A stretch of 10,495 nt of DNA from positions 1-10,495 of the forward strand of contig NW_021827401.1 of the NCBI RefSeq assembly GCF_006345805.1, given 5' to 3'. Made by a program: the position numbers and the translations under genes. The first letter of the stretch is position 1. Each line of letters begins with the position of its first letter. Of the stretch, positions 696 to 10,365 are shown piece by piece. The notes beneath the pieces are model-generated. The model did not search any database, was not told the origin of the DNA, and saw nothing but the letters and a program-made list of their open reading frames with translations. The stretch is from Octopus sinensis (taxonomy: Eukaryota).

Positions 696-2028
696 TTATA
701 GATAATAGCACTCAATTTCAATTTTATCCACAATATATTGTGGCATACAGTAGATTGGATTGACCTTTTTAAGTCCCTCTTCCTCCAAAAGAGCTAGACC
801 TGCCAACCCGAATAATGTATGATAAGGATCAGGCTACAACTAGTCACAACACGACTCACAACATCCCCAGGAATGTCAGCAATGCCTCCTAGTTCTTCAT
901 CTTGAGAGGAAAGAATAAAATCACGGAGAGATCTCTACAAACCTTCATCCATCAGTCTACACCTTATCAATCCATTCCATTCGACCAATTATACTCAGAG
1001 ATGCCAATACCCACCAGGAATAACAAATATCCGGCATCTTCTCTGGCCTCCCTTGAATTAGTCAAAATCCCCCAACCATTCAGTCCCCCTGAAGGCAACT
1101 GTCGAGACTGCAGCCAAGAAGCCAATGAGCTTGTATCCACATGATGTAATCCCTTCAAAATGGCCAAAGTGGCTAAACAACAATAAATCTAATTATGTTA
1201 ATAAATTTATTACAATTAAAAAGTTATTTAAAAATAATTATTATTATAATATATAACCTGGCCTGAGTGTGACTCACTCCCGGGGAGAGATCCAAACCCT
1301 CCATCAAAGTTACGACAGGACAGGACGTAGTTTATAGTAGAAGACCTGTTGACCAGGTGTACCTTACCCTATATGTTTGTCAATATCAAAATGACAATCA
1401 ATGAAAGAGAGGCAACTCCGCAAAATGTTAGTCTTGTATCAGCTTCTCCTAAAAATTATAATATTAAATATATAGTTAATATATATAATTAAAAATAAAA
1501 TGTATTATATTAGGTACTCATGTGGTGCCTACCCCATTCGTCCCCACTAAAGCTGCCATCCTCACATTGAAGACTAGATACATATGAAGCAATAGCTTCA
1601 ATATCAAATAAATGAATTGAATCATATATAATTAATATCTATAATAACAAAACAGATAAACGACCTGTATTGCACTAAGAGTAGACAACAAGTGTGCTTC
1701 GTGGTCAGGATAAGGCGAGAACCCTCCCGATTTTTGAAAGCACGTGGTTATAAATTTGATTATTTCATTGCGAGGAATGGTTTCTAATTTGTCCATGAGA
1801 TCAAGAGCAGTTAAAGACCAATAAATTCCATTCATTCTAATAGATTGAGAGACATTATATTCCTAAAGGTATTTGTTGCAATGTGTTTACAAAATAATCG
1901 GTATCTCTTCCATATTCTGCTATGAAGTTTGTGTGTTTTTCGTAAAGAATTCTTTCGGGAATTTTATTTGGGAGTTTAATGTCTTTTCTCTCAAAAGCCT
2001 TAATCTTTTAATTGCAACAAAAAACCAT
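696..2028 (-). CDS. RABGGTB: Rab geranylgeranyltransferase type II beta subunit, complete, 10 exons, 330 aa
   Basis: Manual splicing on the minus strand. Exons: 2028-2026 (ATG only), 1998-1891, 1862-1665, 1638-1533, 1448-1396, 1368-1258, 1188-1077, 1051-963, 934-860, 833-696 (993 nt, ends TAA). All nine introns are GT..AG (27, 28, 26, 84, 27, 69, 25, 28, 26 nt) and give one uninterrupted frame. Motifs: [125 protein letters not shown]. The Zn-ligand positions (PDxC and DPxH) are intact. Track ORFs 1632-1835 and 967-1167 are partial exons read into introns. Confidence 0.97.
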
Positions 2029-2230
2029 TTTAATTATTAAAAATATATTTAAATTTTATATATTAATTTAAAAATATTATTAATAAATAAAGTGTTTAAA
2101 ATTTTTTTAGATATAAAAAATTTTAATCTTAATGGGATTAATCTAATATTTCGTCAAAAAAAATTTTAATTAAATATGGTTAATTTGTGTTATCGTAATT
2201 TGATTTATTTTATTAAATCAACCTCCTTCC
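2029..2230 (-). promoter_or_regulatory. Presumed RABGGTB promoter/5' UTR, very AT-rich
   Basis: This is the only non-TE sequence between the start codon and retrotransposon fragment A. The call is positional; no specific motif identified. Confidence 0.4.
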
Positions 2231-2731
2231 ATTAAGACTTACGTTCACTGCACGGATGGCCATATTTATGTCGACGCATGGTCTATATTTCGAGGATTCC
2301 CAAATATTGTTATCATTCAACCCATCGAGAGCAAGCTTTCATTGAAAAAGACTTTATATTTGTCCCACATTTTCAGCGTTTCTTTTCAACCAGCTAGGGC
2401 AAAAAACGATTCAATTTTTTACCATCAATTTCACTATGATGCAAAAAAGCTTTATATCGTCCATAAATAGGAGGTGGTTAGTGGGATATGTGGGTTTCCT
2501 CCTGCCCGAGTTTCTTATAATCACTTTCGCGAATTTTCCGTTAAGTATTTTGTCACATGCCCCGCTCGTTACCATTGCTCTAAATTTTTAAAATTTCAAT
2601 TTAAAATATTTAAATGATTGAAATATATTTACTTATTAATTTAAAAATTAATAATATTATGGATTTTTATTTTTTCAATGCTTAACCATTATCATTAAAA
2701 ACAATAAATTAAGCATGCTGTTTTATCTCAT

Positions 2732-2917
2732 GGTTATGGTTAGGGTATAGGTTAGGGTTAGGGTATAGGTTAGGGTTTGGGTGAAGGTTAGGGTTTGGGT
2801 GAAGGTTAGGGTTTGGGTGAAGGTTAGGGTTTGGGTGAAGGTTAGGGTTTGGGTGAAGGTTAGGGTTTGGGTGAAGGTTAGGGTGAAGGTTAGGGAATTG
2901 GTTGGGTTTAGGGTTTG
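2732..2917 (+). repeat. Interstitial telomere-like array of GGTTAG variants with an 18-bp higher-order unit
   Basis: Hexamer register from 2732: GGTTAT GGTTAG GGTATA GGTTAG GGTTAG GGTATA, then six perfect GGTTAGGGTTTGGGTGAA (2768-2875), then GGTTAG GGTGAA GGTTAG and a degenerate end. Eleven exact GGTTAG units lie in register. Confidence 0.95.
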
Positions 2918-3007
2918 AAAAAATTTAAAGTAGAATTTTCGAATGGAGATACAAAGATTGTTCACATGAAAAGAATCAAAAAAGGACAAATTTATTTTTC
3001 GTTTTAA
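2912..3007 (+). pseudogene. Remnant resembling the C-terminal (GPY/F-type) tail of a Gypsy/Ginger integrase
   Basis: Frame 2912-3007 reads GLKKFKVEFSNGDTKIVHMKRIKKGQIYFSF-stop. It fits the (Y/F)xVxxxxGxxxxVHxxxLK pattern that ends Gypsy/Ginger integrases. Short, motif-level recognition only. Confidence 0.5.
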
Positions 3008-4329
3008 ACTTCAGATCTATATATGATTTTAAACTAAAAAACTGGATAAAGTTTGAGTTTTTTATAAGAGATCTACAGATGATTTTAAACCTTTATCTTT
3101 TTACATTTCAAAAAATGTTTTAAATAAAACTAAAAACTGGTTAGAGTTAATTATAAAACTATCAAATTATGTGCCTTTAAAGCGTTTCACACAATTCACA
3201 TTTTTAAAATATGTTTTAATGTGCTTATCAGTCAAAATGGTTTGTTGTATAAAAATATTATTTTAATTTATTTGTTTTAAAGCATCTTTTAGTATATCAT
3301 TAAATTGTACTCTAATTAACCTAATATATAGGTTGAATTTTATGTCGTTGTGATTGATTATTAATTTTTCTAAAAAATTGAAAAATCATTAATCAATTAT
3401 TTCTCAGAAATAATTCGGAGGTAACGAGTGGGGCATAGTAATCCCTGAGGCATGTGACATATTTGGTTCAGAGGGTCCATTAACCACTCAAAAATCGGAG
3501 GTGAGAAAGAATCTCCTTGCGAAATACCTTCATTGATTTAACCTCTCATAATTTTCTGTATACCAGATTTAACTAATTTTCCATTTTGTGATAAGTTTCT
3601 GGATAAACACTACCATCTAACACGGGAGGCCAGGGTTTTGCAAGATTAAGAATTCGTAGTCTACCAAGTGAGTCAAATGCTTTCCTCACATCAATCCACA
3701 TAGCAAATTACTTATTATCATTTTGCTGGTTTATACACTAATTGAGATTGCCTGGTTTTTTTTCTGACACATTCTTCGTGTCTCAAATTGATTGTTACGG
3801 ATGTGGAAAGTGACATTATGTGGACGGAAAGTACACAAGAAAGTTGCTCAGGAAATCGAGTTCTTCAGGGGTGCGTCTGGTTTGCTGTTAAGAGTTCAGG
3901 TTAATCTGCTATGGAGTCAGTCCGATTAATTAATAGGTCGGTCATCTGCGATCGTCTTCGGAACCAGATAGGATTAATTTCTTTTGGAATATTTAAATTT
4001 ATTAATCTAATTTTTTATTAAGTATTTTAATCAATAAGTTATGCTTACAATTTCCTTGCTTAAGTACTAAATTTAGAATTTTTTTACAAATCGCTAATTT
4101 CCAAATTAGGCTTTATACTTTACTATAAAAAAAATGGTTTTCATTTTGTATATAACGATGTTATTTGATAAATAGCATTATTAGTTTCGACATTTAGTAA
4201 TTTCGAAATTATTAATTTGTATTGTTTCCTTTCATATTTATTCAAATGTTCTATCGTTCTCTATTTTGATATTATTTTATTTTCACTTTTTTTTAATTTT
4301 TAATATTTATTATAAATTTCTTTTTTTAA

Positions 4330-4790
4330 TTTTCTGATCCTCACAACATTTGAAAAGTACGGAATGCAACATCTTCGATTTAATAATCTTCATTAGATTC
4401 TTTTGTTGATTCTCCTTGATTATGTTTATATTCAATTCTGAAGGATCTTCAATATTGTATTTGAAGGTAAGAAATCTTTGAGATAGTGGCCATATGTGTT
4501 TTCTTTATTTTAAGACCCGCAAGATTCCAGACTTTCTGAGACACATTGTAGACTTTCTTTCAAGATCAGTCAAAAATTGGTATAACATGCATTCACTTTT
4601 ATGGACAATTGAATTAAGTCCTCTAACAAAGTTAGATCTGCTTATATATAATCTTTCCTTATTTGCAGGTTTCAGATGAACATGTAAATTAGATAGAATC
4701 CTTCGAACTTCGGTATCAATGGCTTGAAACTCGTGTTGCTCAATGTCAAGTAGTCCAAAACTCAATTATTAAAAGAAACAAAATTTAACT
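4330..4790 (-). mobile_element. Non-LTR retrotransposon copy B: post-RT (thumb/linker) fragment, truncated at both ends
   Basis: ORF 4505-4765 (HLKPANKERLYISRSNFVRGL) continues after a stop and frameshift as THMATI..FLTFKYNI..IIKENQQKNLMKIIKSKMLHSVLFKCC. Homologous to copy C (HLKPANKERLYLSRKSLGRGL, WHMATIAGFLASKY, KMLHSVLFKCM). Confidence 0.92.
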
Positions 4791-4803
4791 TAAGCTAGAC
4801 TAT

Positions 4804-7600
4804 TTAATTTAGATTCTCAGTCCCAATTATTGGAATCTCTCTCCTCCTTTTAGGAGAAGAGCTTGCAACCAGTTCCTCCTCACTCTCCCTCTCCCAGCCA
4901 GATAGATTTTCTATTTGTCTCATATTTTTCACCGGCGTGTCACGGCAGCATGCCACTTCTGCAAGCTGGTAAGCAGCAGAGGCGTATTCTTCGGCAGATA
5001 CTCTCACTCCATGTCTATGTTCAACTACCATGCTTTCCACGTTAACGCCGTCCCACGTCAAGACAACCGGGATAATCTTTACCTTTGCATCATAAAGTAT
5101 CGAAAGTTCGTTTGCGAGCAGATCTTATTTATGAAATTTCTCGATTTCGACTTGTTTGAAGCGATCTTGTGACGTGATGCCAACTTCGATTAAGGTTATC
5201 TCTTGTTTAGTTTTGTCATACACGAAGATATCTGGTTTGTTGGATTGAACTTTAGTTTCCGTCATGATTGACATATCGACTCTGATTTCAACATTCTGCG
5301 TCGATATTATGAACTGAACAGAATGAGTCTTTAATTTGCTTCCTCTCTTAATACCGTAGGTTCGACACAAATGAAGGTGAATGCAGTTCACAACTTCATT
5401 ATGTCTCCGCAGATAATCACTGTTTAACATCTTCCCACACTGCGTAGTCAAATGATCAATTGTTTTCTTGCATTTTTTGCAGTGACTGCATAAAGATCCC
5501 ATGGATGTGAAGAACAAATTCCTATCCTGCAAGAGACAGTACAATGCTTCACTCCGTGGGCCATTATTTCCTTTAGATAACCACTCTGAGGATGTGGCTA
5601 GATCAACATTTTGTTTGTCCATGCATTTAAAAAGAACCGAATGTAGCATTTTACAATTGATGTTCTTAAGCAAATATTTTCTTTGAGCATCTTTGATAAA
5701 CTCAACACCCAAATTCTCCATGTCGAGAATTGCATACTTGGAGGCAAGAAATCCTGCAATTGTGGCCATATGCCATTTATTTGTTTGTATCACACGCCGG
5801 ATTCCCGATCTCCGTAAGCATACTGTCGACTGTCTTTCTAAACTTTTCAGGAACTGGAAAAGTATCAGTTCACTTCTGAAAGAGACTGAAGCAAGTCCTC
5901 TCCCAAGAGATTTCCGACTTAAATATAACCTCTCTTTATTTGCAGGTTTGAGATGGAGTCTGAGAGTCGTAAGAAGTTGTCGTATTTGACGGTCAATACA
6001 ATCAAATTCATGAGGTTCAATATTAATAAGTCGGATGTAATAATTATATAGAGAAATGGCATATTCATTTACAGCGTGGAATAAATTTACCGCATTTAAT
6101 TTCGTCTATGAAAGGATGGTTATCCTTTCCTTTACATTTCCAATAATAGAATCCATTACTTTACTCTTAAGAACATTACTTCCTGCATCTTCAAGTACAC
6201 CCAAGTAGCGATATCCTATGACTCCTTCCAAAGTCTCACAACAAGATAACGATTTAACATTTGATGCTGACTTTTCTGAGTTCATCTCCAAGCCAACAGT
6301 TTTAAAGAATACATCAACAGCTTCCATCATTTTAATTACTATATCTTCTTTAAGAGCGAATATCTTTAGGTCGTCAATGAAGAACAAATGATTAGTAGAA
6401 TAGGTCAACATATTTGGGTCCTGTTGATTAATCTGAACCTTTGGAAACATGGCATTAAGAATCCTGCTTAATGGGTCCATCACCATAACAAACAGTTGCG
6501 GGGATAACGAGTCTCCTTGTAAAATCCCTCGGCTCAACTTTACAGAACCAATTCTCCTTCCGTCAACATGGAGCTTTACAGTCCACATTCGTACAGTCCT
6601 TTTCACAAAGTTAACAATCCATACAGGTATCCCAGAGCATTCCAACACATGAAATAGAAAGTCGTGGTTAACAGAATCGAAAGCCTTCTTGACATCAATC
6701 CATGTAGAGTATAGCCCATTTCCATACTCTTTATTTAGGCATTGGTTAATAAGGGCCTGTTCTTTAGCACCCTGACGCTGTCTCCTCGTAACAAGTTGAT
6801 TGTCGGAAATTAAGCCAAATACATCCATGAACTCAGACAGTTTTCCATTAACACACTTGGTAACTAACTTATAAAGTGTCGACATGCATGTTATAGGCCG
6901 TAAATCTTTCAGGGTCTCACAGTCGTTCTTTTTAGGAATTAGATATGTAATTCCAGTATAAAACCAGTTTTCTGGCATGTAATCACCGTTGATTATTTTG
7001 TTGATTTAAACACATAAGAATTCATGCAGAGATTCTAGTCTTTTAATGAAGAAATTATATATTCCGTCACACCCCGGTGCCTTCCAGTCAGGAAGATATT
7101 TAATGATCTCCATTATGTAATTATTTGATAAATCTGGCAACATGTCTTCACTGCCGGTTATTCTTTTACTAACATTGTCCAGTGACACGGATATTTCGCG
7201 CCTTTTGCTCCATACTTTTTCCCAGAACGACATGCACTCCTCATCGTCAAAAGAGTATGTTGTGACTTCATTACTCTCTGATAAGTTTCTGTAAAATCTT
7301 CTTCTGTTTAGTTCGAAGCAAACATTGTCCTTACGGAAGTCCTTCCTCGAGTTATATACAGCATTTTGTTTTTTCTTAACTCTGATTAGGTCATGTAGTA
7401 AGGATTCGATTCTCAAAAGCTCTCCTTTTTTCCTTTTTATATCCATAACGACATAGAATATCCATCACATTTTGTTTTTCACACTGTGGCAGAGCCTGTC
7501 TTACGTAACAATTTACAAGTTCTAGTTCTGCGGATAATTTTGAAATCTTCGCCTCGGTATTTCCCAACCATGTGGTCTGTGACTTAACTTTGAAAGTTTG
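4804..7600 (-). mobile_element. Non-LTR retrotransposon copy C: near-complete RT + CCHC knuckle + RLE ORF, pseudogenised
   Basis: Track ORFs 7006-7446, 6106-6978, 5125-5793 and 4804-5061 share one frame, broken only by single stops at 7008-7006 (TAA), 6108-6106 (TAG) and 5127-5125 (TAA). A frameshift near 7425-7445 links an upstream piece (KVKSQTTWLGNTEAKISKL, to about 7600). Motifs: WKAPGCDGI, LRPITC, WIDVKKAFDSV, GILQGDSLSP, FIDDLK, YRYLG, C-x2-C-x8-H-x4-C (CSHCKKCKKTIDHLTTQC), RHNEVV, KPDI..LIEVGIT..EKFHK. Confidence 0.96.
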
Positions 7601-7738
7601 TGGTATAATGATCGGGGCGAAATTTTTTATCGCAAGGATTCTGGAATTAATGATGTAAATCGTTACGTCATTTTTTGTTCGGATTATCAGGTTGACATTT
7701 TGAGAAAATCAGATGTCTGGGTTATTGATGGTACCTTC

Positions 7739-7889
7739 AAAAGCGTGTCTAATCAATTCAAACAAATGATTACAATACAAGGAAAATACTTAGGTAAATT
7801 CTGTGGAATTTCAAACAAATGATTTCAAATAAAAGCGTGCCTAATCAATTCAAACAAATGATTACAATACAAGGAAAATACTTAGGTAA
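7739..7889 (+). repeat. 59-bp direct duplication with a 33-nt spacer
   Basis: 7739-7797 and 7831-7889 are identical except T7748/C7840. The spacer holds a third partial copy TTCAAACAAATGATT (7810-7824). Confidence 0.95.
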
Positions 7890-8371
7890 TTGAAAAATTT
7901 TCTCTTGATGCGACAGGAAAAGAAAACAACCAACAAATAATGCATTTTTTGATTTATTTTAAAAAACAATTTATTGCTGACCCATCTTATGACGTCAGTT
8001 TTTGGAGTTGTTTTCATCGGGTATTAAAGTCAATGCCCAGGACGACCAATTCATTGGAAGGTTGGCATAAGCTGTTGAACAGTTCTTTTAACAGAGCGCA
8101 CTCAAATTTGGCAGCTTTTGTCAATGTTTTGGCCAGGTAAAAACAAAGACTTTTTGTGAAAATGACACAAATTAAGTCAGGAAAGTATCTTGAAGTGTCT
8201 GCGACAGACTGCAAAAAGGAACTTGAACTGAGAATAGCATGTGAAAATTTTCATGAATTTGAAGTAGATTGCTATTTTAAGCTAATTGATGGTTTGATTT
8301 GCTTTAAAAGTTCAGAATAAAAAGTAATTGTTTTAAAATTTTATTTTATTTACCCTTAAAATATTTTTCTT

Positions 8372-8440
8372 TGTAGACGAGTTGTCGCCAAATAAATTTA
8401 GGCGAGTTAGGGGACAACTCGTCTACAGGGGAGTTGTCGC
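8372..8440. repeat. Perfect 15-bp inverted repeat and GAGTTGTCGC subrepeats in the probable MULE right TIR
   Basis: TGTAGACGAGTTGTC (8372-8386) pairs with GACAACTCGTCTACA (8413-8427). GAGTTGTCGC occurs at 8379-8388 and 8431-8440. Confidence 0.85.
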
Positions 8441-8454
8441 TCAACGGAATTTCC

Positions 8455-8750
8455 GTTTTCTGTTATACCCACATCATTTTGATTACCACAAGTCTTATGG
8501 GCTTTCACTTTCAATAATTTTTTAACATCGGAGATACTTTTCTGAACAAGAAAACGGATATTGAAATTATGTATAATTAGGTTCCATCCACCACGAGGGA
8601 TTCTTCCAAATCTCCTCTTAGCCGAATCAACAACAGAAGATATCCACTCCAATTTGCCGTTAGAATGTGTTTCAGTTATCAATGATTTAAGGGGAAGCAA
8701 ATGCGTTCGTGAAGGTTCAATTAAGGATCATTGCAAATTTCAGGCGTTCC
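8455..8750 (-). mobile_element. Probable N-terminal domain of the copy C retrotransposon ORF, separated from it by the MULE
   Basis: ORF 8407-8700 (EWISSVVDSAKRRFGRIPRGGWNLIIHNFNIRF) is on the same strand and upstream of C. It resembles an RxPRxxW helix I recall from N-termini of related microsporidian-type RT proteins (unverified). Its last 15 or so codons run into the MULE TIR. Confidence 0.5.
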
Positions 8751-8849
8751 ATGTAGCCCTGAAGACACGTTTCCAACTTCTGATTGATTATTATTATTTG
8801 TATTTTGCATAGGAAGGCCCTCAGGATTTGTTTGTCTTCTAGTCGCTCC

Positions 8850-10010
8850 ATCCTCTATTCGCAAAGTGATTCAGATAGGCAAGCCCACCTCTTTCCCTTG
8901 GTGATAAATTTCTCTTATTCGCTGACAGGCAGGGGCGATGTTAAAGACATACTAATTTGGTGATAAATTTCTCTTATTCGCTTGTCCAGTTTGAACGTTC
9001 TTTCCCATGGTTCAACCCTGTTTCTAAAAGAAACAATCATGCTCTCAAGGGTCTTCTTTATAGTGAGCGATTGAATGTATGCGTGCGTTCTCTCACTGAT
9101 TTTAAGCGAACGTGCATATTTCAGGAATTTTTGAGTAACCAGCCCATCCCATGTTAATACAATGGGTACTATCTTCACTTTTGCATGATATATTAATTCC
9201 AGCTCTTTGGATAGGAAGTCATATTTCCTTATTTTTTCGATCTCCACTTGCTGTAAGTTTTGGGAAGATGTGATCACAACTTTCACAAACAAAATTTGAT
9301 TCCTTATCTTGTCGAAAACAAACAAATCGGGTTTGTTATGTTCGACGACGATGTCGGTCTTTATAAATGTGTTCATTCTGATTTCAATCTTTGCATTTGA
9401 CTATACAGATTCTACCGAGTGTTTTTTAAGCTTTTTATCATTCTTGAGTCCGAACTCTCGACAAAAATAAAAGTGGATGCATCTCACCACTTCATCGTGC
9501 CTCCTGACATAATCCCCATGTAACATCTTCTCACATCTGGTGGCACAGTGATCGACGGTCTTCTTTCATCTTATGCAGTGAGAACACATTGAGTTATGTT
9601 CTGTAAAGAATTTCACTATATTTAAACCATTTTTATTTTTGTCTCTGGATTTTTCTATTTGGAATCCGGCGTTCCTTTTAATTTATTTATTTCAAAAATA
9701 TAGATACTGAATAAATTACACATACAAATGCTTCCCAATCACTCATAGATTGTATTTTGGATTCTCTGTTTCCAATTCGATTTGATTGAAATTCGTTGAT
9801 ATACAAATTGCGCGAAATATATCAGGGTTGAAATATCTTCAATACCTGTAGGTAGATTCTTTGATTCAATCAATGTTTTATTTATCATTTCAATTATTTC
9901 GTGATTTACATGTTATATCTTTTTTGTTTGTGGCCTCGCATTGATTGGTTTAGATTTATTTTCAACATCTTGATTTAATAATTCTTCAGACACCTTGTTG
10001 GTGTCAAATC
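8850..10010 (-). mobile_element. Non-LTR retrotransposon copy D: CCHC + RLE end, probably joined to an N-terminal piece with the RT deleted
   Basis: MCSHCIR-stop-KKTVDHCATRC (about 9590-9535), RRHDEVVRCIH and ORF 8915-9376 (KPDLFVFD..EKIRKYD..VLTWDG..HAYIQ..KKTLES). Upstream 9740-9975 reads NARPQTKKI..EDISTLIYFAQFVYQRISIKSNWKQRIQNTI, resembling the N-terminal W-x3-(I/T)E-x-KI segment of C. No RT motifs lie in between. The RLE part is firm; the N-terminal part is tentative. Confidence 0.85.
8898..8982. repeat. 26-bp perfect direct repeat flanking a 33-nt insert
   Basis: TTGGTGATAAATTTCTCTTATTCGCT at 8898-8923 and 8957-8982; unique spacer 8924-8956. Confidence 0.95.
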
Positions 10011-10094: not shown

Positions 10095-10365
10095 TCTAGA
10101 TAACAAAGATAGTTTTTGAAGAATTTTGACACTATTTTGTCCCAGATCATAACGACAGGGACGATCTTTACTTTTGCCCGGTAGATCGCTCCCAGTTCAT
10201 TTGCCAGCAAGTCCTATTTGTGTAACTTTTTCACTTTAATCTGATTGAAACAATTTTGTGAAGTGATTCCCACCTCGATAAGAGTAATTTTGTTCCTCGA
10301 TTTGTCATGAACAAATATGTTTGGCTTGTTATTCGGGGTGAACAATTATAAAGCATCAATTCCAA
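10095..10365 (-). mobile_element. Non-LTR retrotransposon copy E: RLE fragment
   Basis: A frame absent from the ORF track reads PNNKPNIFVHDKSRNKITLIEVGITSQNCFNQIKVKKLHK-stop-DLLANELGAIYRAKVKIVPVVMIWDKIVSKFFKNY, clearly homologous to the RLE of C and D. Confidence 0.92.

What the first reader, a model, noticed from the sequence alone, without database searches (positions are those of the whole stretch)
2732..3007. Telomere-like array carried inside the transposon, at the point where its coding region is missing
A roughly 185-bp TTAGGG-variant tract with a homogenised 18-bp unit sits between the AT-rich left arm and the integrase-tail remnant, abutting the latter directly. Its G-rich strand runs 5'->3' away from the left arm, the polarity expected if telomerase extended a broken left arm that was then rejoined to the right arm. 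Telomerase-associated break repair is an established origin of interstitial telomeric sequences. Alternatively the family carries the tract as functional cargo: a telomere-protein binding site, a G-quadruplex former (GGG-TTT-GGG-N9-GGG-TTT-GGG), or a seed for chromosome breakage and healing. A mobile element dispersing telomeric seeds would be a notable system, especially in a lineage with DNA rearrangement or elimination. The functional ideas are speculation.
Basis: partly seen in the sequence, partly recalled or inferred. Interest (0 to 1): 0.75.

Follow-up and report, generated by a model that had tools for sequence, protein, structure and literature searches.

The report
Telomere-like minisatellite inside a small transposon
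A 186-base run of decayed TTAGGG telomere-type repeats, recently expanded as an 18-base unit, sits inside a 909-base non-coding mobile element in what looks like a dicyemid (octopus-kidney parasite) genome; it is most likely an ordinary passenger repeat, and no second copy could be found to test anything more.

Summary
The array is real. Positions 2732-2917 are 186 nt with no C and 30 in-phase hexamers whose consensus is TTAGGG (12 exact). They are organised as 18-mers: two older variants, six identical GGTTAGGGTTTGGGTGAA units, and a decayed 3' edge.

It does lie inside a mobile element. Removing 2551-3459 (909 bp, TGTCA...TGACA ends, 23-bp inverted termini, 5-bp duplication TATTT) restores an old reverse-transcriptase frame exactly.

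The 'integrase-tail remnant', and so 'the point where the coding region is missing', is not supported. There was no Pfam hit, no integrase among 1.84 billion representatives, and the open frame is what chance gives. The element is non-coding: a solo LTR or a TDD/Ginger-like non-autonomous element.

The host is not octopus. Ultra-short introns (21-31 nt) in the neighbouring RabGGTB gene, and transposons shared with Octopus sinensis assembly scaffolds, point to a dicyemid.

At 1.10 mismatches per hexamer, with the same variants repeated six times, the array is not a fresh telomerase product. It looks like an old telomere-type tract re-amplified by slippage. Where the seed came from, and whether the family carries it, could not be tested: no other copy turned up in 183 kb of related DNA or in any public collection. 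Interest is modest.

The parts
2732..2917 (+). Telomere-like minisatellite. It has 30 in-phase hexamers (consensus TTAGGG, 12 exact) arranged as 18-mers: two A-type units (TTAxGG TTAGGG TATAGG, 2734-2769), six identical B-type units (TTAGGG TTTGGG TGAAGG; core 2768-2875), and a decayed 3' edge (2876-2917).
   Evidence: TRF; repeat family D1; hexamer and 18-mer dissection; G4 prediction
2551..3459 (+). 909-bp non-coding mobile-element insertion that contains the array. Termini are 5'-TGTCA...TGACA-3'.
   Evidence: Removing it restores the host RT reading frame and colinearity with an intact RT copy, with no gap at the join. No coding signal was found in any frame.
2546..2550 (.). Left copy of the 5-bp target-site duplication TATTT
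   Evidence: Six equivalent in-frame joins from 2545|3460 to 2550|3465
3460..3464 (.). Right copy of the 5-bp target-site duplication TATTT
2551..2573 (+). Left terminal inverted repeat TGTCACATGCCCCGCTCGTTACC
   Evidence: Inverted-repeat pair I13. The 17-mer occurs only at the two ends; 0.02 matches expected by chance.
3420..3459 (-). Right terminal inverted repeat. It is the same 23 nt with one mismatch, plus a 17-bp insert (AGTAATCCCTGAGGCAT) bounded by GGCAT direct repeats.
2574..2731 (+). AT-rich 'left arm' of the element, non-coding, with an AT-rich palindrome at 2583-2649
2918..3419 (+). AT-rich 'right arm' (21% GC).
   Evidence: D10; no protein-family or homologue support; open frames are within chance
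2230..2545 (-). 3' half of the old, stop-ridden non-LTR reverse-transcriptase fragment that the element split (…LNGKFAKV…NHLLFMDDIKLF…)
3465..3720 (-). 5' half of the same split reverse-transcriptase fragment (…WIDVRKAFDS…GISQGDSFSPPIFEWLMDPLNQI)
711..2028 (-). Neighbouring intact RabGGTase-beta gene with ultra-short introns. It identifies the host lineage. Its probable start lies about 520 bp from the element.
   Evidence: Pfam Prenyltrans; 423-bit end-to-end match to human/rat RabGGTB; intron lengths

Best explanation
The tract is an interstitial telomere-type repeat that has become an ordinary minisatellite. It rides as a passenger inside a 909-bp non-coding, integrase-type mobile element (TG...CA ends, 5-bp TSD). 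That element is nested in a dead non-LTR retrotransposon about 0.5 kb upstream of RabGGTB, in a dicyemid-like genome.

Shown: the insertion and its limits; the hexamer phase and TTAGGG consensus; the 18-mer higher-order structure with six identical central copies and older variants at the edges; the absence of coding capacity.

Inferred history: a short (TTAGGG)n-like tract existed in the element and decayed by point mutation into variant hexamers (TTTGGG, TGAAGG, TATAGG). A three-hexamer block was then amplified recently by replication slippage or unequal exchange. These are the usual dynamics of G-rich tandem repeats and of TTAGGG tracts in particular.

No function needs to be invoked. The origin of the seed (telomerase or DSB repair, capture of subtelomeric DNA, or a family-born repeat) is unresolved.
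For: The array is real, strand-pure and in one phase over 30 hexamers with consensus T-T-A-G-G-G. It has 1.10 mismatches per unit, and the same variant triplet is copied six times without change, flanked by more divergent 18-mers. That is the signature of local amplification rather than templated synthesis.

Tandem arrays of period 9-96 bp are common in related scaffolds, with at least 8 distinct arrays in about 160 kb, several beside retroelements. PMC6410037 states that ITS amplify by unequal crossing-over and replication slippage, that (TTAGGG)n tracts expand by polymerase slippage, and that ITS are often flanked by mobile elements.

The element is one insertion event. The TSD, the inverted termini and exact restoration of the host RT tie both arms together across the array. 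No protein-coding signal is present in the element.
Against: Only one copy of the element is available, so it cannot be shown that the array is dispensable or copy-specific. A TTAGGG-type tract is unique in about 190 kb of this genome, so its presence inside a mobile element could be more than coincidence. The G-strand is predicted to form stable G-quadruplexes, which can have biological effects. The host lineage is reported to eliminate chromatin (PMC6543705), which leaves room for a functional reading.
Confidence: 0.6

Rival explanations
1. An autonomous, integrase-encoding transposon broke internally. Telomerase extended the 3' end of the left arm with TTAGGG repeats, and the healed end was rejoined to the right arm. 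This deleted the coding region and left the array as filler at the deletion junction.
For: The hexamer consensus is the canonical metazoan telomere unit. The hexamer just upstream (TCATGG) ends with GG in register with the repeats, which resembles the 1-5 nt microhomology seen at telomerase-inserted ITS (PMC2246262). The G-strand polarity is compatible. Internal-deletion derivatives of DNA transposons are common (general knowledge).
Against: No remnant of an integrase or any other ORF is detectable on either side of the array, so the 'deletion point' is conjecture. If the element is a solo LTR there was never a coding region. At 1.10 mismatches per unit in an 18-mer higher-order pattern, the array is not a direct telomerase product. 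Polarity is uninformative, since either orientation fits one of the two ends. The dicyemid telomere motif is unknown.
Confidence: 0.15
2. The 909-bp unit is a solo LTR, and the array is a family-born tandem repeat of the LTR (U3-type repeats). It was present before integration and is shared by other LTRs of the family.
For: TG...CA termini (TGTNR) with a 5-bp TSD are the commonest LTR signature (PMC6839031; PMC2836005). The size (909 bp) and lack of coding capacity fit an LTR. Tandem repeats inside LTRs are frequent (general knowledge).
Against: The inverted termini (23 nt, or 40 nt with the insert) are long for an LTR and typical of TIR elements. No full-length element, PBS/PPT or second LTR was found in the window or in 183 kb of related DNA.
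Confidence: 0.15
3. Functional cargo. The family disperses telomere-like seeds that bind telomere proteins, form G-quadruplexes, or serve as sites of chromosome breakage and de novo telomere addition during dicyemid chromatin elimination.
For: The inferred host is a dicyemid, a lineage with reported chromatin elimination and extrachromosomal circular DNA (PMC6543705). Four G4s are predicted on the G-strand. The tract is the only telomere-like sequence in about 190 kb. Ciliate transposon-like elements bearing telomeric repeats are a precedent (my own knowledge, not checked here).
Against: There is no second copy, no conservation evidence and no data on ends or coverage. The array is degenerate and still changing rather than conserved. 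The element is rare or absent in 183 kb. It sits beside an intact housekeeping gene, which is not an obvious elimination boundary.
Confidence: 0.06
4. Assembly artefact: the array joins unrelated sequences, or its length is mis-assembled.
For: Low-complexity G-rich repeats are error-prone. Six identical units could be a collapsed or expanded array.
Against: Both sides of the array belong to a single insertion event. Matching inverted termini and the TSD bracket it, and the two host RT halves rejoin exactly. A chimeric join at the array is therefore very unlikely. Only the copy number is uncertain.
Confidence: 0.03

Closest known systems
Short interstitial telomeric sequences (ITS) of vertebrates, inserted at double-strand breaks by telomerase (Nergadze et al. 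2007, PMC2246262; review PMC6410037)
   Same: An internal tract of TTAGGG-type hexamers in one orientation. There is possible in-register microhomology at the 5' junction. It is prone to slippage expansion and associated with mobile elements.
   Different: It is far more degenerate (1.10 versus at most 0.4 mismatches per unit) and organised as an 18-bp higher-order repeat. It lies inside a transposon rather than at a simple break in unique DNA. No empty orthologous site is available, and the host telomere motif is unknown.
G-rich minisatellites and higher-order tandem repeats inside transposable elements
   Same: An 18-bp unit with identical central copies and divergent edges, in the non-coding interior of a non-autonomous element. 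Arrays like this are common in the same genome.
   Different: The unit is built from three telomere-type hexamers. No other array in 183 kb is telomere-like.
Ginger2/TDD DNA transposons, and LTR retrotransposon LTRs (integrase-type integration)
   Same: TGTNR...YNACA termini, a 5-bp TSD (TDD-4/5 and most LTR elements) and an AT-rich target.
   Different: No integrase or any ORF is present. The TIRs are shorter than reported for Ginger2 (50-180 bp) and longer than usual for LTR ends. Metazoan Ginger2 makes 4-bp TSDs. No autonomous or full-length relative was found.
Ciliate telomere-bearing transposon-like elements (Oxytricha TBE1, Tetrahymena Tel-1) - cited from my own knowledge, not verified here
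   Same: Mobile elements that carry telomeric repeats, in lineages that eliminate DNA.
   Different: In those elements the telomeric repeats are at the element termini and match the host telomere exactly. Here the array is internal, degenerate and seen in a single copy.

Membership tests
Telomerase-inserted short ITS (criteria of PMC2246262) | At least 4 TTAGGG units with fewer than one mismatch per unit | tested here: not met
   There are 30 units and 12 are exact, but the mean is 1.10 mismatches per unit. Reference values are 0-0.14 (young) and 0.29-0.40 (old).
Telomerase-inserted short ITS | [quoted passage not shown] | tested here: inconclusive
   The upstream in-phase hexamer is TCATGG (4 of 6 match, terminal GG in register). 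Without an empty site it cannot be told apart from a decayed repeat.
Telomerase-inserted short ITS | An orthologous or paralogous empty site lacking the repeats | not testable with these tools
   No other copy of the element and no orthologous locus could be retrieved.
Telomerase-inserted short ITS | The repeat equals the host telomere motif | not testable with these tools
   No dicyemid telomere motif appears in the searched literature. No chromosome ends are among the loci. TTAGGG is expected for Spiralia only by inference.
Minisatellite / higher-order tandem repeat | Head-to-tail copies of a 10-100-bp unit, homogenised centre and divergent edges | tested here: met
   18-bp unit, 8.5 copies, 97% match. 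Six units are identical and edge units differ at 3-8 of 18 positions.
Transposable-element insertion | Target-site duplication, and exact restoration of the interrupted sequence on removal | tested here: met
   5-bp TSD TATTT. The RT frame is restored and colinear with an intact copy.
Ginger1 DNA transposons (PMC2836005) | 4-bp CCGG/CCGT TSD; Gypsy-like integrase with GPY/F; TGTNR ends | tested here: not met
   The TSD is 5-bp TATTT and no integrase is present. Only the TGTNR ends match.
Ginger2/TDD DNA transposons (PMC2836005) | TGTNR ends; 4-bp TSD (metazoan) or 5-bp TSD (TDD-4/5); AT-rich target; TIRs of about 50-180 bp; DDE integrase-like transposase | tested here: inconclusive
   Ends TGTCA, a 5-bp TSD and an AT-rich target are met. 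The TIR is only 23-40 bp and there is no transposase. It could be a non-autonomous derivative.
Solo LTR of an LTR retrotransposon | TG...CA ends, 4-6-bp TSD (mostly 5), non-coding, 0.1-5 kb; family members exist as direct pairs around gag-pol with PBS/PPT | tested here: inconclusive
   The first four features are met. No paired copy or internal region was found in 183 kb, which is too little DNA to decide.
   The only Pfam hit is DUF4926 at E = 0.076. An exhaustive phmmer scan gave 3 hits, none an integrase. The open frame is expected by chance. Caveat: a 31-aa query has low power.
G-quadruplex-forming sequence | Four G3 tracts with loops of 1-7 nt (canonical) or up to 12 nt (extended); stable predicted G4 | tested here: met
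   There is no canonical motif, but four extended motifs with 3-9-3 loops. ViennaRNA with G4 enabled predicts four G4s at -16.3 kcal/mol, against 0 without G4. In vitro formation was not tested.
Telomere-bearing transposons of ciliates (TBE1/Tel-1 type) | Host telomeric repeats at the element termini | tested here: not met
   The termini are TGTCAC... inverted repeats, and the array is internal, 181 bp from the left end.
Dicyemid genome (host assignment) | Animal genes with many introns under 30 nt; about 36% GC; repeat-rich; association with octopus | tested here: met
   Introns are 21-31 nt in 7 of 9 positions (and direct reading). The window and related scaffolds are 33-40% GC. TEs are shared with O. 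sinensis assembly scaffolds. The gene is 57% identical to true octopus RabGGTB and has a different structure. Reference values come from PMC6736024 and PMC13644364. No dicyemid sequence was available for direct comparison.

The most novel reading that the evidence does not exclude
The 909-bp element belongs to a family that carries a telomere-type, G4-forming array as a working part. For example, it could act as a seed or boundary for chromosome breakage and de novo telomere addition, or for excision into the extrachromosomal circles reported in dicyemid somatic cells. That would make it an animal counterpart of the telomere-bearing transposons of ciliates.
Probability: 0.05. Interest if true: 0.85.

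Novelty: new member of a known kind. Interest (0 to 1): 0.3.

Why it matters
As it stands this is one more interstitial telomere-like minisatellite inside a transposon, which is a known kind of thing. Its modest value has two parts. First, it gives a hint that TTAGGG-type repeats exist in a dicyemid-like genome whose telomeres are undescribed. Second, it marks a concrete, PCR-sized locus where the old reports of chromatin elimination and circular DNA in dicyemids could be tested. If the family proved to carry the array systematically, the link between mobile elements, telomere seeds and programmed DNA loss in an animal would be of real interest.

Tried and rejected
1. A metagenome scan with the 17-nt terminus gave 77 hits. 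All were GC-rich bacterial contigs and none was preceded by TGTCAC, so they are chance matches.

2. The 88-aa minus-strand ORF across the array and 'tail' was used as a homology query to catch other copies. It returned only one low-complexity hit.

3. Exact look-ups of window ORFs found nothing on record.

4. I sampled nine loci (183 kb) from Octopus sinensis assembly scaffolds that share the window's retroelements. They hold no copy of the element, no terminus and no telomere-like tract. A 15/16 match to the right terminus in L079 proved to be chance.

5. A RabGGTB homology search, meant to reach an orthologous locus, found nothing above 58% identity. The host is not in the database.

6. The array double unit and the 23-nt terminus were scanned against viral and prokaryotic genome collections, with zero hits.

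7. Rfam and tRNA scans of the window found nothing relevant, so the element is not SINE- or ribozyme-like.

8. Hydra/Ginger1 was my first guess from the AT-richness and TGT ends. I rejected it on the TSD (5-bp TATTT, not CCGG), the lack of an integrase and the dicyemid-type introns.

9. An octopus origin for the window was rejected on gene structure and 57% identity to the true octopus gene.

10. The Dicyema circular-DNA 'signal' motifs are published only as logos, so they could not be compared.

11. Longer open frames in the right arm (69 and 64 codons) are not significant (p about 0.06 and 0.10) and match no family.

Full report
**1. The observation**

- Tandem Repeats Finder reports one strong array at 2732-2884: period 18, 8.5 copies, 97% matches, score 257, unit GGTTAGGGTTTGGGTGAA.
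- Read in hexamer phase from 2734, it is 30 consecutive units. There are 12 TTAGGG, 6 TTTGGG, 7 TGAAGG, 2 TATAGG and single TTATGG, AATTGG and TTGGGT. The per-position consensus is exactly T-T-A-G-G-G.
- The 186 nt at 2732-2917 contain no C.
- Twelve of the window's 13 TTAGGG motifs lie in the tract.
- No TTAGGG dimer and no other strand-pure G tract occurs in the rest of the window or in 183 kb of related DNA.
- At the 18-mer level there are two older units (TTAxGG TTAGGG TATAGG), six identical units (TTAGGG TTTGGG TGAAGG, 2768-2875) and a decayed 3' edge.

This is far beyond chance.

**2.

- On the minus strand, 3720→3465 and 2545→2230 are two halves of one old reverse-transcriptase fragment.
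- Joining any of 2545|3460 to 2550|3465 gives the continuous frame ...GISQGDSFSPPIFEWLMDPLNQILNGKFAKV...NHLLFMDDIKLF.
- That frame aligns colinearly, with no gap at the join, to the intact RT copy at 6106-6978 (49% identity, E = 1e-19).
- Six equivalent joins mean a 5-bp target-site duplication: TATTT at 2546-2550 and 3460-3464.
- The insert is 2551-3459 (909 bp). Its ends are inverted repeats: TGTCACATGCCCCGCTCGTTACC on the left, and the same 23 nt with one mismatch plus a 17-bp insert on the right.
- The 17-nt core occurs only at these two places, with 0.02 matches expected by chance.
- Because one insertion event brackets the array, a chimeric assembly join at the array is very unlikely. 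Only the repeat number could be wrong.

**3. The 'integrase-tail remnant' is not supported**

The + frame at 2912-3004 (GLKKFKVEFSNGDTKIVHMKRIKKGQIYFSF) failed every test.
- It has no Pfam match apart from DUF4926 at E = 0.076.
- An exhaustive phmmer scan of 1.84 billion representatives gave three weak hits. All are long repetitive proteins and none is an integrase.
- No similar peptide occurs in 183 kb of related DNA.
- A 29-31-codon stop-free frame is found in 99% of shuffles of this 21%-GC arm.
- Longer open frames in the arm are also within chance and match no family.

The element is therefore non-coding, and nothing shows that a coding region is 'missing' at the array. A 31-aa query has limited power, so this is absence of support rather than disproof.

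**4. What kind of element it is**

TGTNR...YNACA ends with a 5-bp TSD are the signature of integrase-type integration.
- Most LTR retrotransposons make a 5-bp TSD and end TG...CA (PMC6839031).
- Ginger1 makes 4-bp CCGG TSDs. Metazoan Ginger2 makes 4-bp TSDs in AT-rich targets. TDD-4/5 make 5-bp TSDs. All have TGTNR ends (PMC2836005).

The 23-40-nt inverted termini are long for an LTR and short for Ginger2. I cannot decide between a solo LTR and a TDD/Ginger-like non-autonomous element.

**5. The host**

The neighbouring gene (minus strand, about 711-2028) is an intact RabGGTase-beta.
- My hand-spliced product aligns end to end with human and rat RabGGTB (423 bits).
- Its introns are 28, 26, about 84, 27, 69, about 25, 31 and about 26 nt. 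A possible 21-nt intron follows directly after the ATG (read from the sequence).
- The true Octopus vulgaris gene is only 57% identical. It spans about 13 kb with 0.5-2 kb introns.
- Among animals, introns under 30 nt are known only in dicyemids and myxozoans (PMC13644364).
- Dicyema japonicum lives in Octopus sinensis. Its genome has 36.7% GC, 49% repeats and a mean intron of 38 bp (PMC6736024).
- The window's R2-like retroelement and other repeats are 73-96% identical to scaffolds of the O. sinensis assembly GCA_006345805.1. Those scaffolds share no repeat with 36 kb of genuine octopus chromosome.

I infer that the window is dicyemid DNA, either from a dicyemid assembly or from parasite contamination of a host assembly. 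This is inference, because no dicyemid sequence was available for direct comparison. Dicyemids are reported to eliminate chromatin and to produce circular DNA (PMC6543705). I found no description of their telomere repeat.

**6. How the array most likely arose**

- The TTAGGG consensus in a fixed phase argues for descent from a telomere-type hexamer tract.
- The visible array is not a direct telomerase product. It carries 1.10 mismatches per unit, against 0-0.14 for young and 0.29-0.40 for old telomerase-inserted ITS (PMC2246262).
- The same three-hexamer variant block is copied six times without a single difference, while edge units differ at 3-8 of 18 positions.
- That is the pattern left by replication slippage or unequal exchange. 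The ITS literature gives these as the mechanisms for amplification of such tracts (PMC6410037).
- Tandem arrays of 9-96-bp period are common in the related scaffolds.

The best-supported account is therefore an old, decayed telomere-type tract, recently re-expanded as an 18-bp minisatellite, carried passively in a non-coding mobile element (confidence about 0.6).

The origin of the seed is open. It could be telomerase or DSB repair, capture, or a family-born repeat. The upstream hexamer TCATGG has GG in register, which fits microhomology or a decayed repeat equally well. The polarity argument does not discriminate between models.

**7. Function**

The G-strand has no canonical G4 motif (loops of 7 nt or fewer). 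It does have four extended motifs with 3-9-3 loops. ViennaRNA with G4 enabled predicts four G4s at -16.3 kcal/mol, against 0 without them. G4 formation is therefore plausible in silico. Nothing else bears on function.

**8. What could not be done**

The key test is whether other family copies carry the array, and it failed for lack of data. No second copy was found in the window, in 183 kb of related scaffolds, or in the metagenome, viral or prokaryotic collections. ORF-based and neighbour-gene-based searches found no relatives either. The family is thus not highly abundant, but its true copy number is unknown.

**9. Verdict**

It is a transposon-borne array, but the 'coding region missing here' and 'integrase tail' parts do not hold. 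The telomerase-healing story is neither needed nor excluded. The thing is a new instance of a known kind: an ITS-derived minisatellite in a mobile element. Interest is modest (0.3). It is raised slightly by the probable dicyemid host, where a link to DNA elimination is conceivable but unsupported (about 5%).

Noticed in passing
window 711-2028 (minus strand): An intact RabGGTase-beta gene is packed into about 1.3 kb with introns of 28, 26, ~84, 27, 69, ~25, 31 and ~26 nt. A possible start ATG (2028-2026) is followed at once by a 21-nt GT..AG intron (2025-2005). This is the ultra-short-intron signature of dicyemids.
   Followed up: yes
L078-L086 (GCA_006345805.1 scaffolds VCDQ01005863, 8573, 10661, 000570, 10235, 8158, 10986): Scaffolds annotated as Octopus sinensis carry retroelements 73-96% identical to the window's. 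They share no repeat with 36 kb of genuine octopus chromosome (L087). They are probably dicyemid contamination of the host assembly, or else host-parasite transposon sharing.
   Followed up: partly
window 4766-7581, 8915-9600, 10140-10340 (minus strand): Three copies or fragments of an R2-like non-LTR retrotransposon: an RT domain plus a C-terminal Cys/His motif and a KPD...E...K nuclease-like motif (the last two read by eye). Beyond the octopus-labelled scaffolds, its nearest protein relatives (43-50% identity) are in microsporidia and Babesia/Theileria. That is a patchy, parasite-biased distribution.
   Followed up: partly
window 3432-3453: The right terminal repeat of the 909-bp element contains a 17-bp insert (AGTAATCCCTGAGGCAT) bounded by GGCAT direct repeats. 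It looks like a small duplication or repair footprint.
   Followed up: no
window 8372-8427: A near-perfect hairpin: 21-nt arms, 90% complementary, 14-nt loop (TGTAGACGAGTTGTCGCC... / ...GGGGACAACTCGTCTACA). It lies just after a transposase-like open frame at 7598-8140, which I recognised only by eye (no Pfam hit). It may be the terminus of another DNA transposon.
   Followed up: no
window 7739-7797 / 7831-7889 and 8898-8923 / 8957-8982: A 59-nt direct repeat (98% identical, 92 nt apart) and a perfect 26-nt direct repeat (59 nt apart) lie inside the transposon cluster. Their origin is unexplained.
   Followed up: no
L080 6395-6908, L082 3984-5636, L083 11803-12511, L085 106-993; L082 18727-20609, L079 6099-6784: A 94-96-bp satellite recurs next to R2-like copies on four scaffolds. 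A 21-bp satellite (TAATCCCAC...) forms a 1.9-kb array. Tandem arrays are frequent companions of retroelements in this genome.
   Followed up: no
window 4332-4758 and 8477-8834 vs L082 8538-10862: Two window segments that are 3.7 kb apart are 94-96% identical to segments only 1.5 kb apart in L082. The window therefore holds one repeat family interrupted by later nested insertions, that is, a transposon graveyard beside a housekeeping gene.
   Followed up: partly
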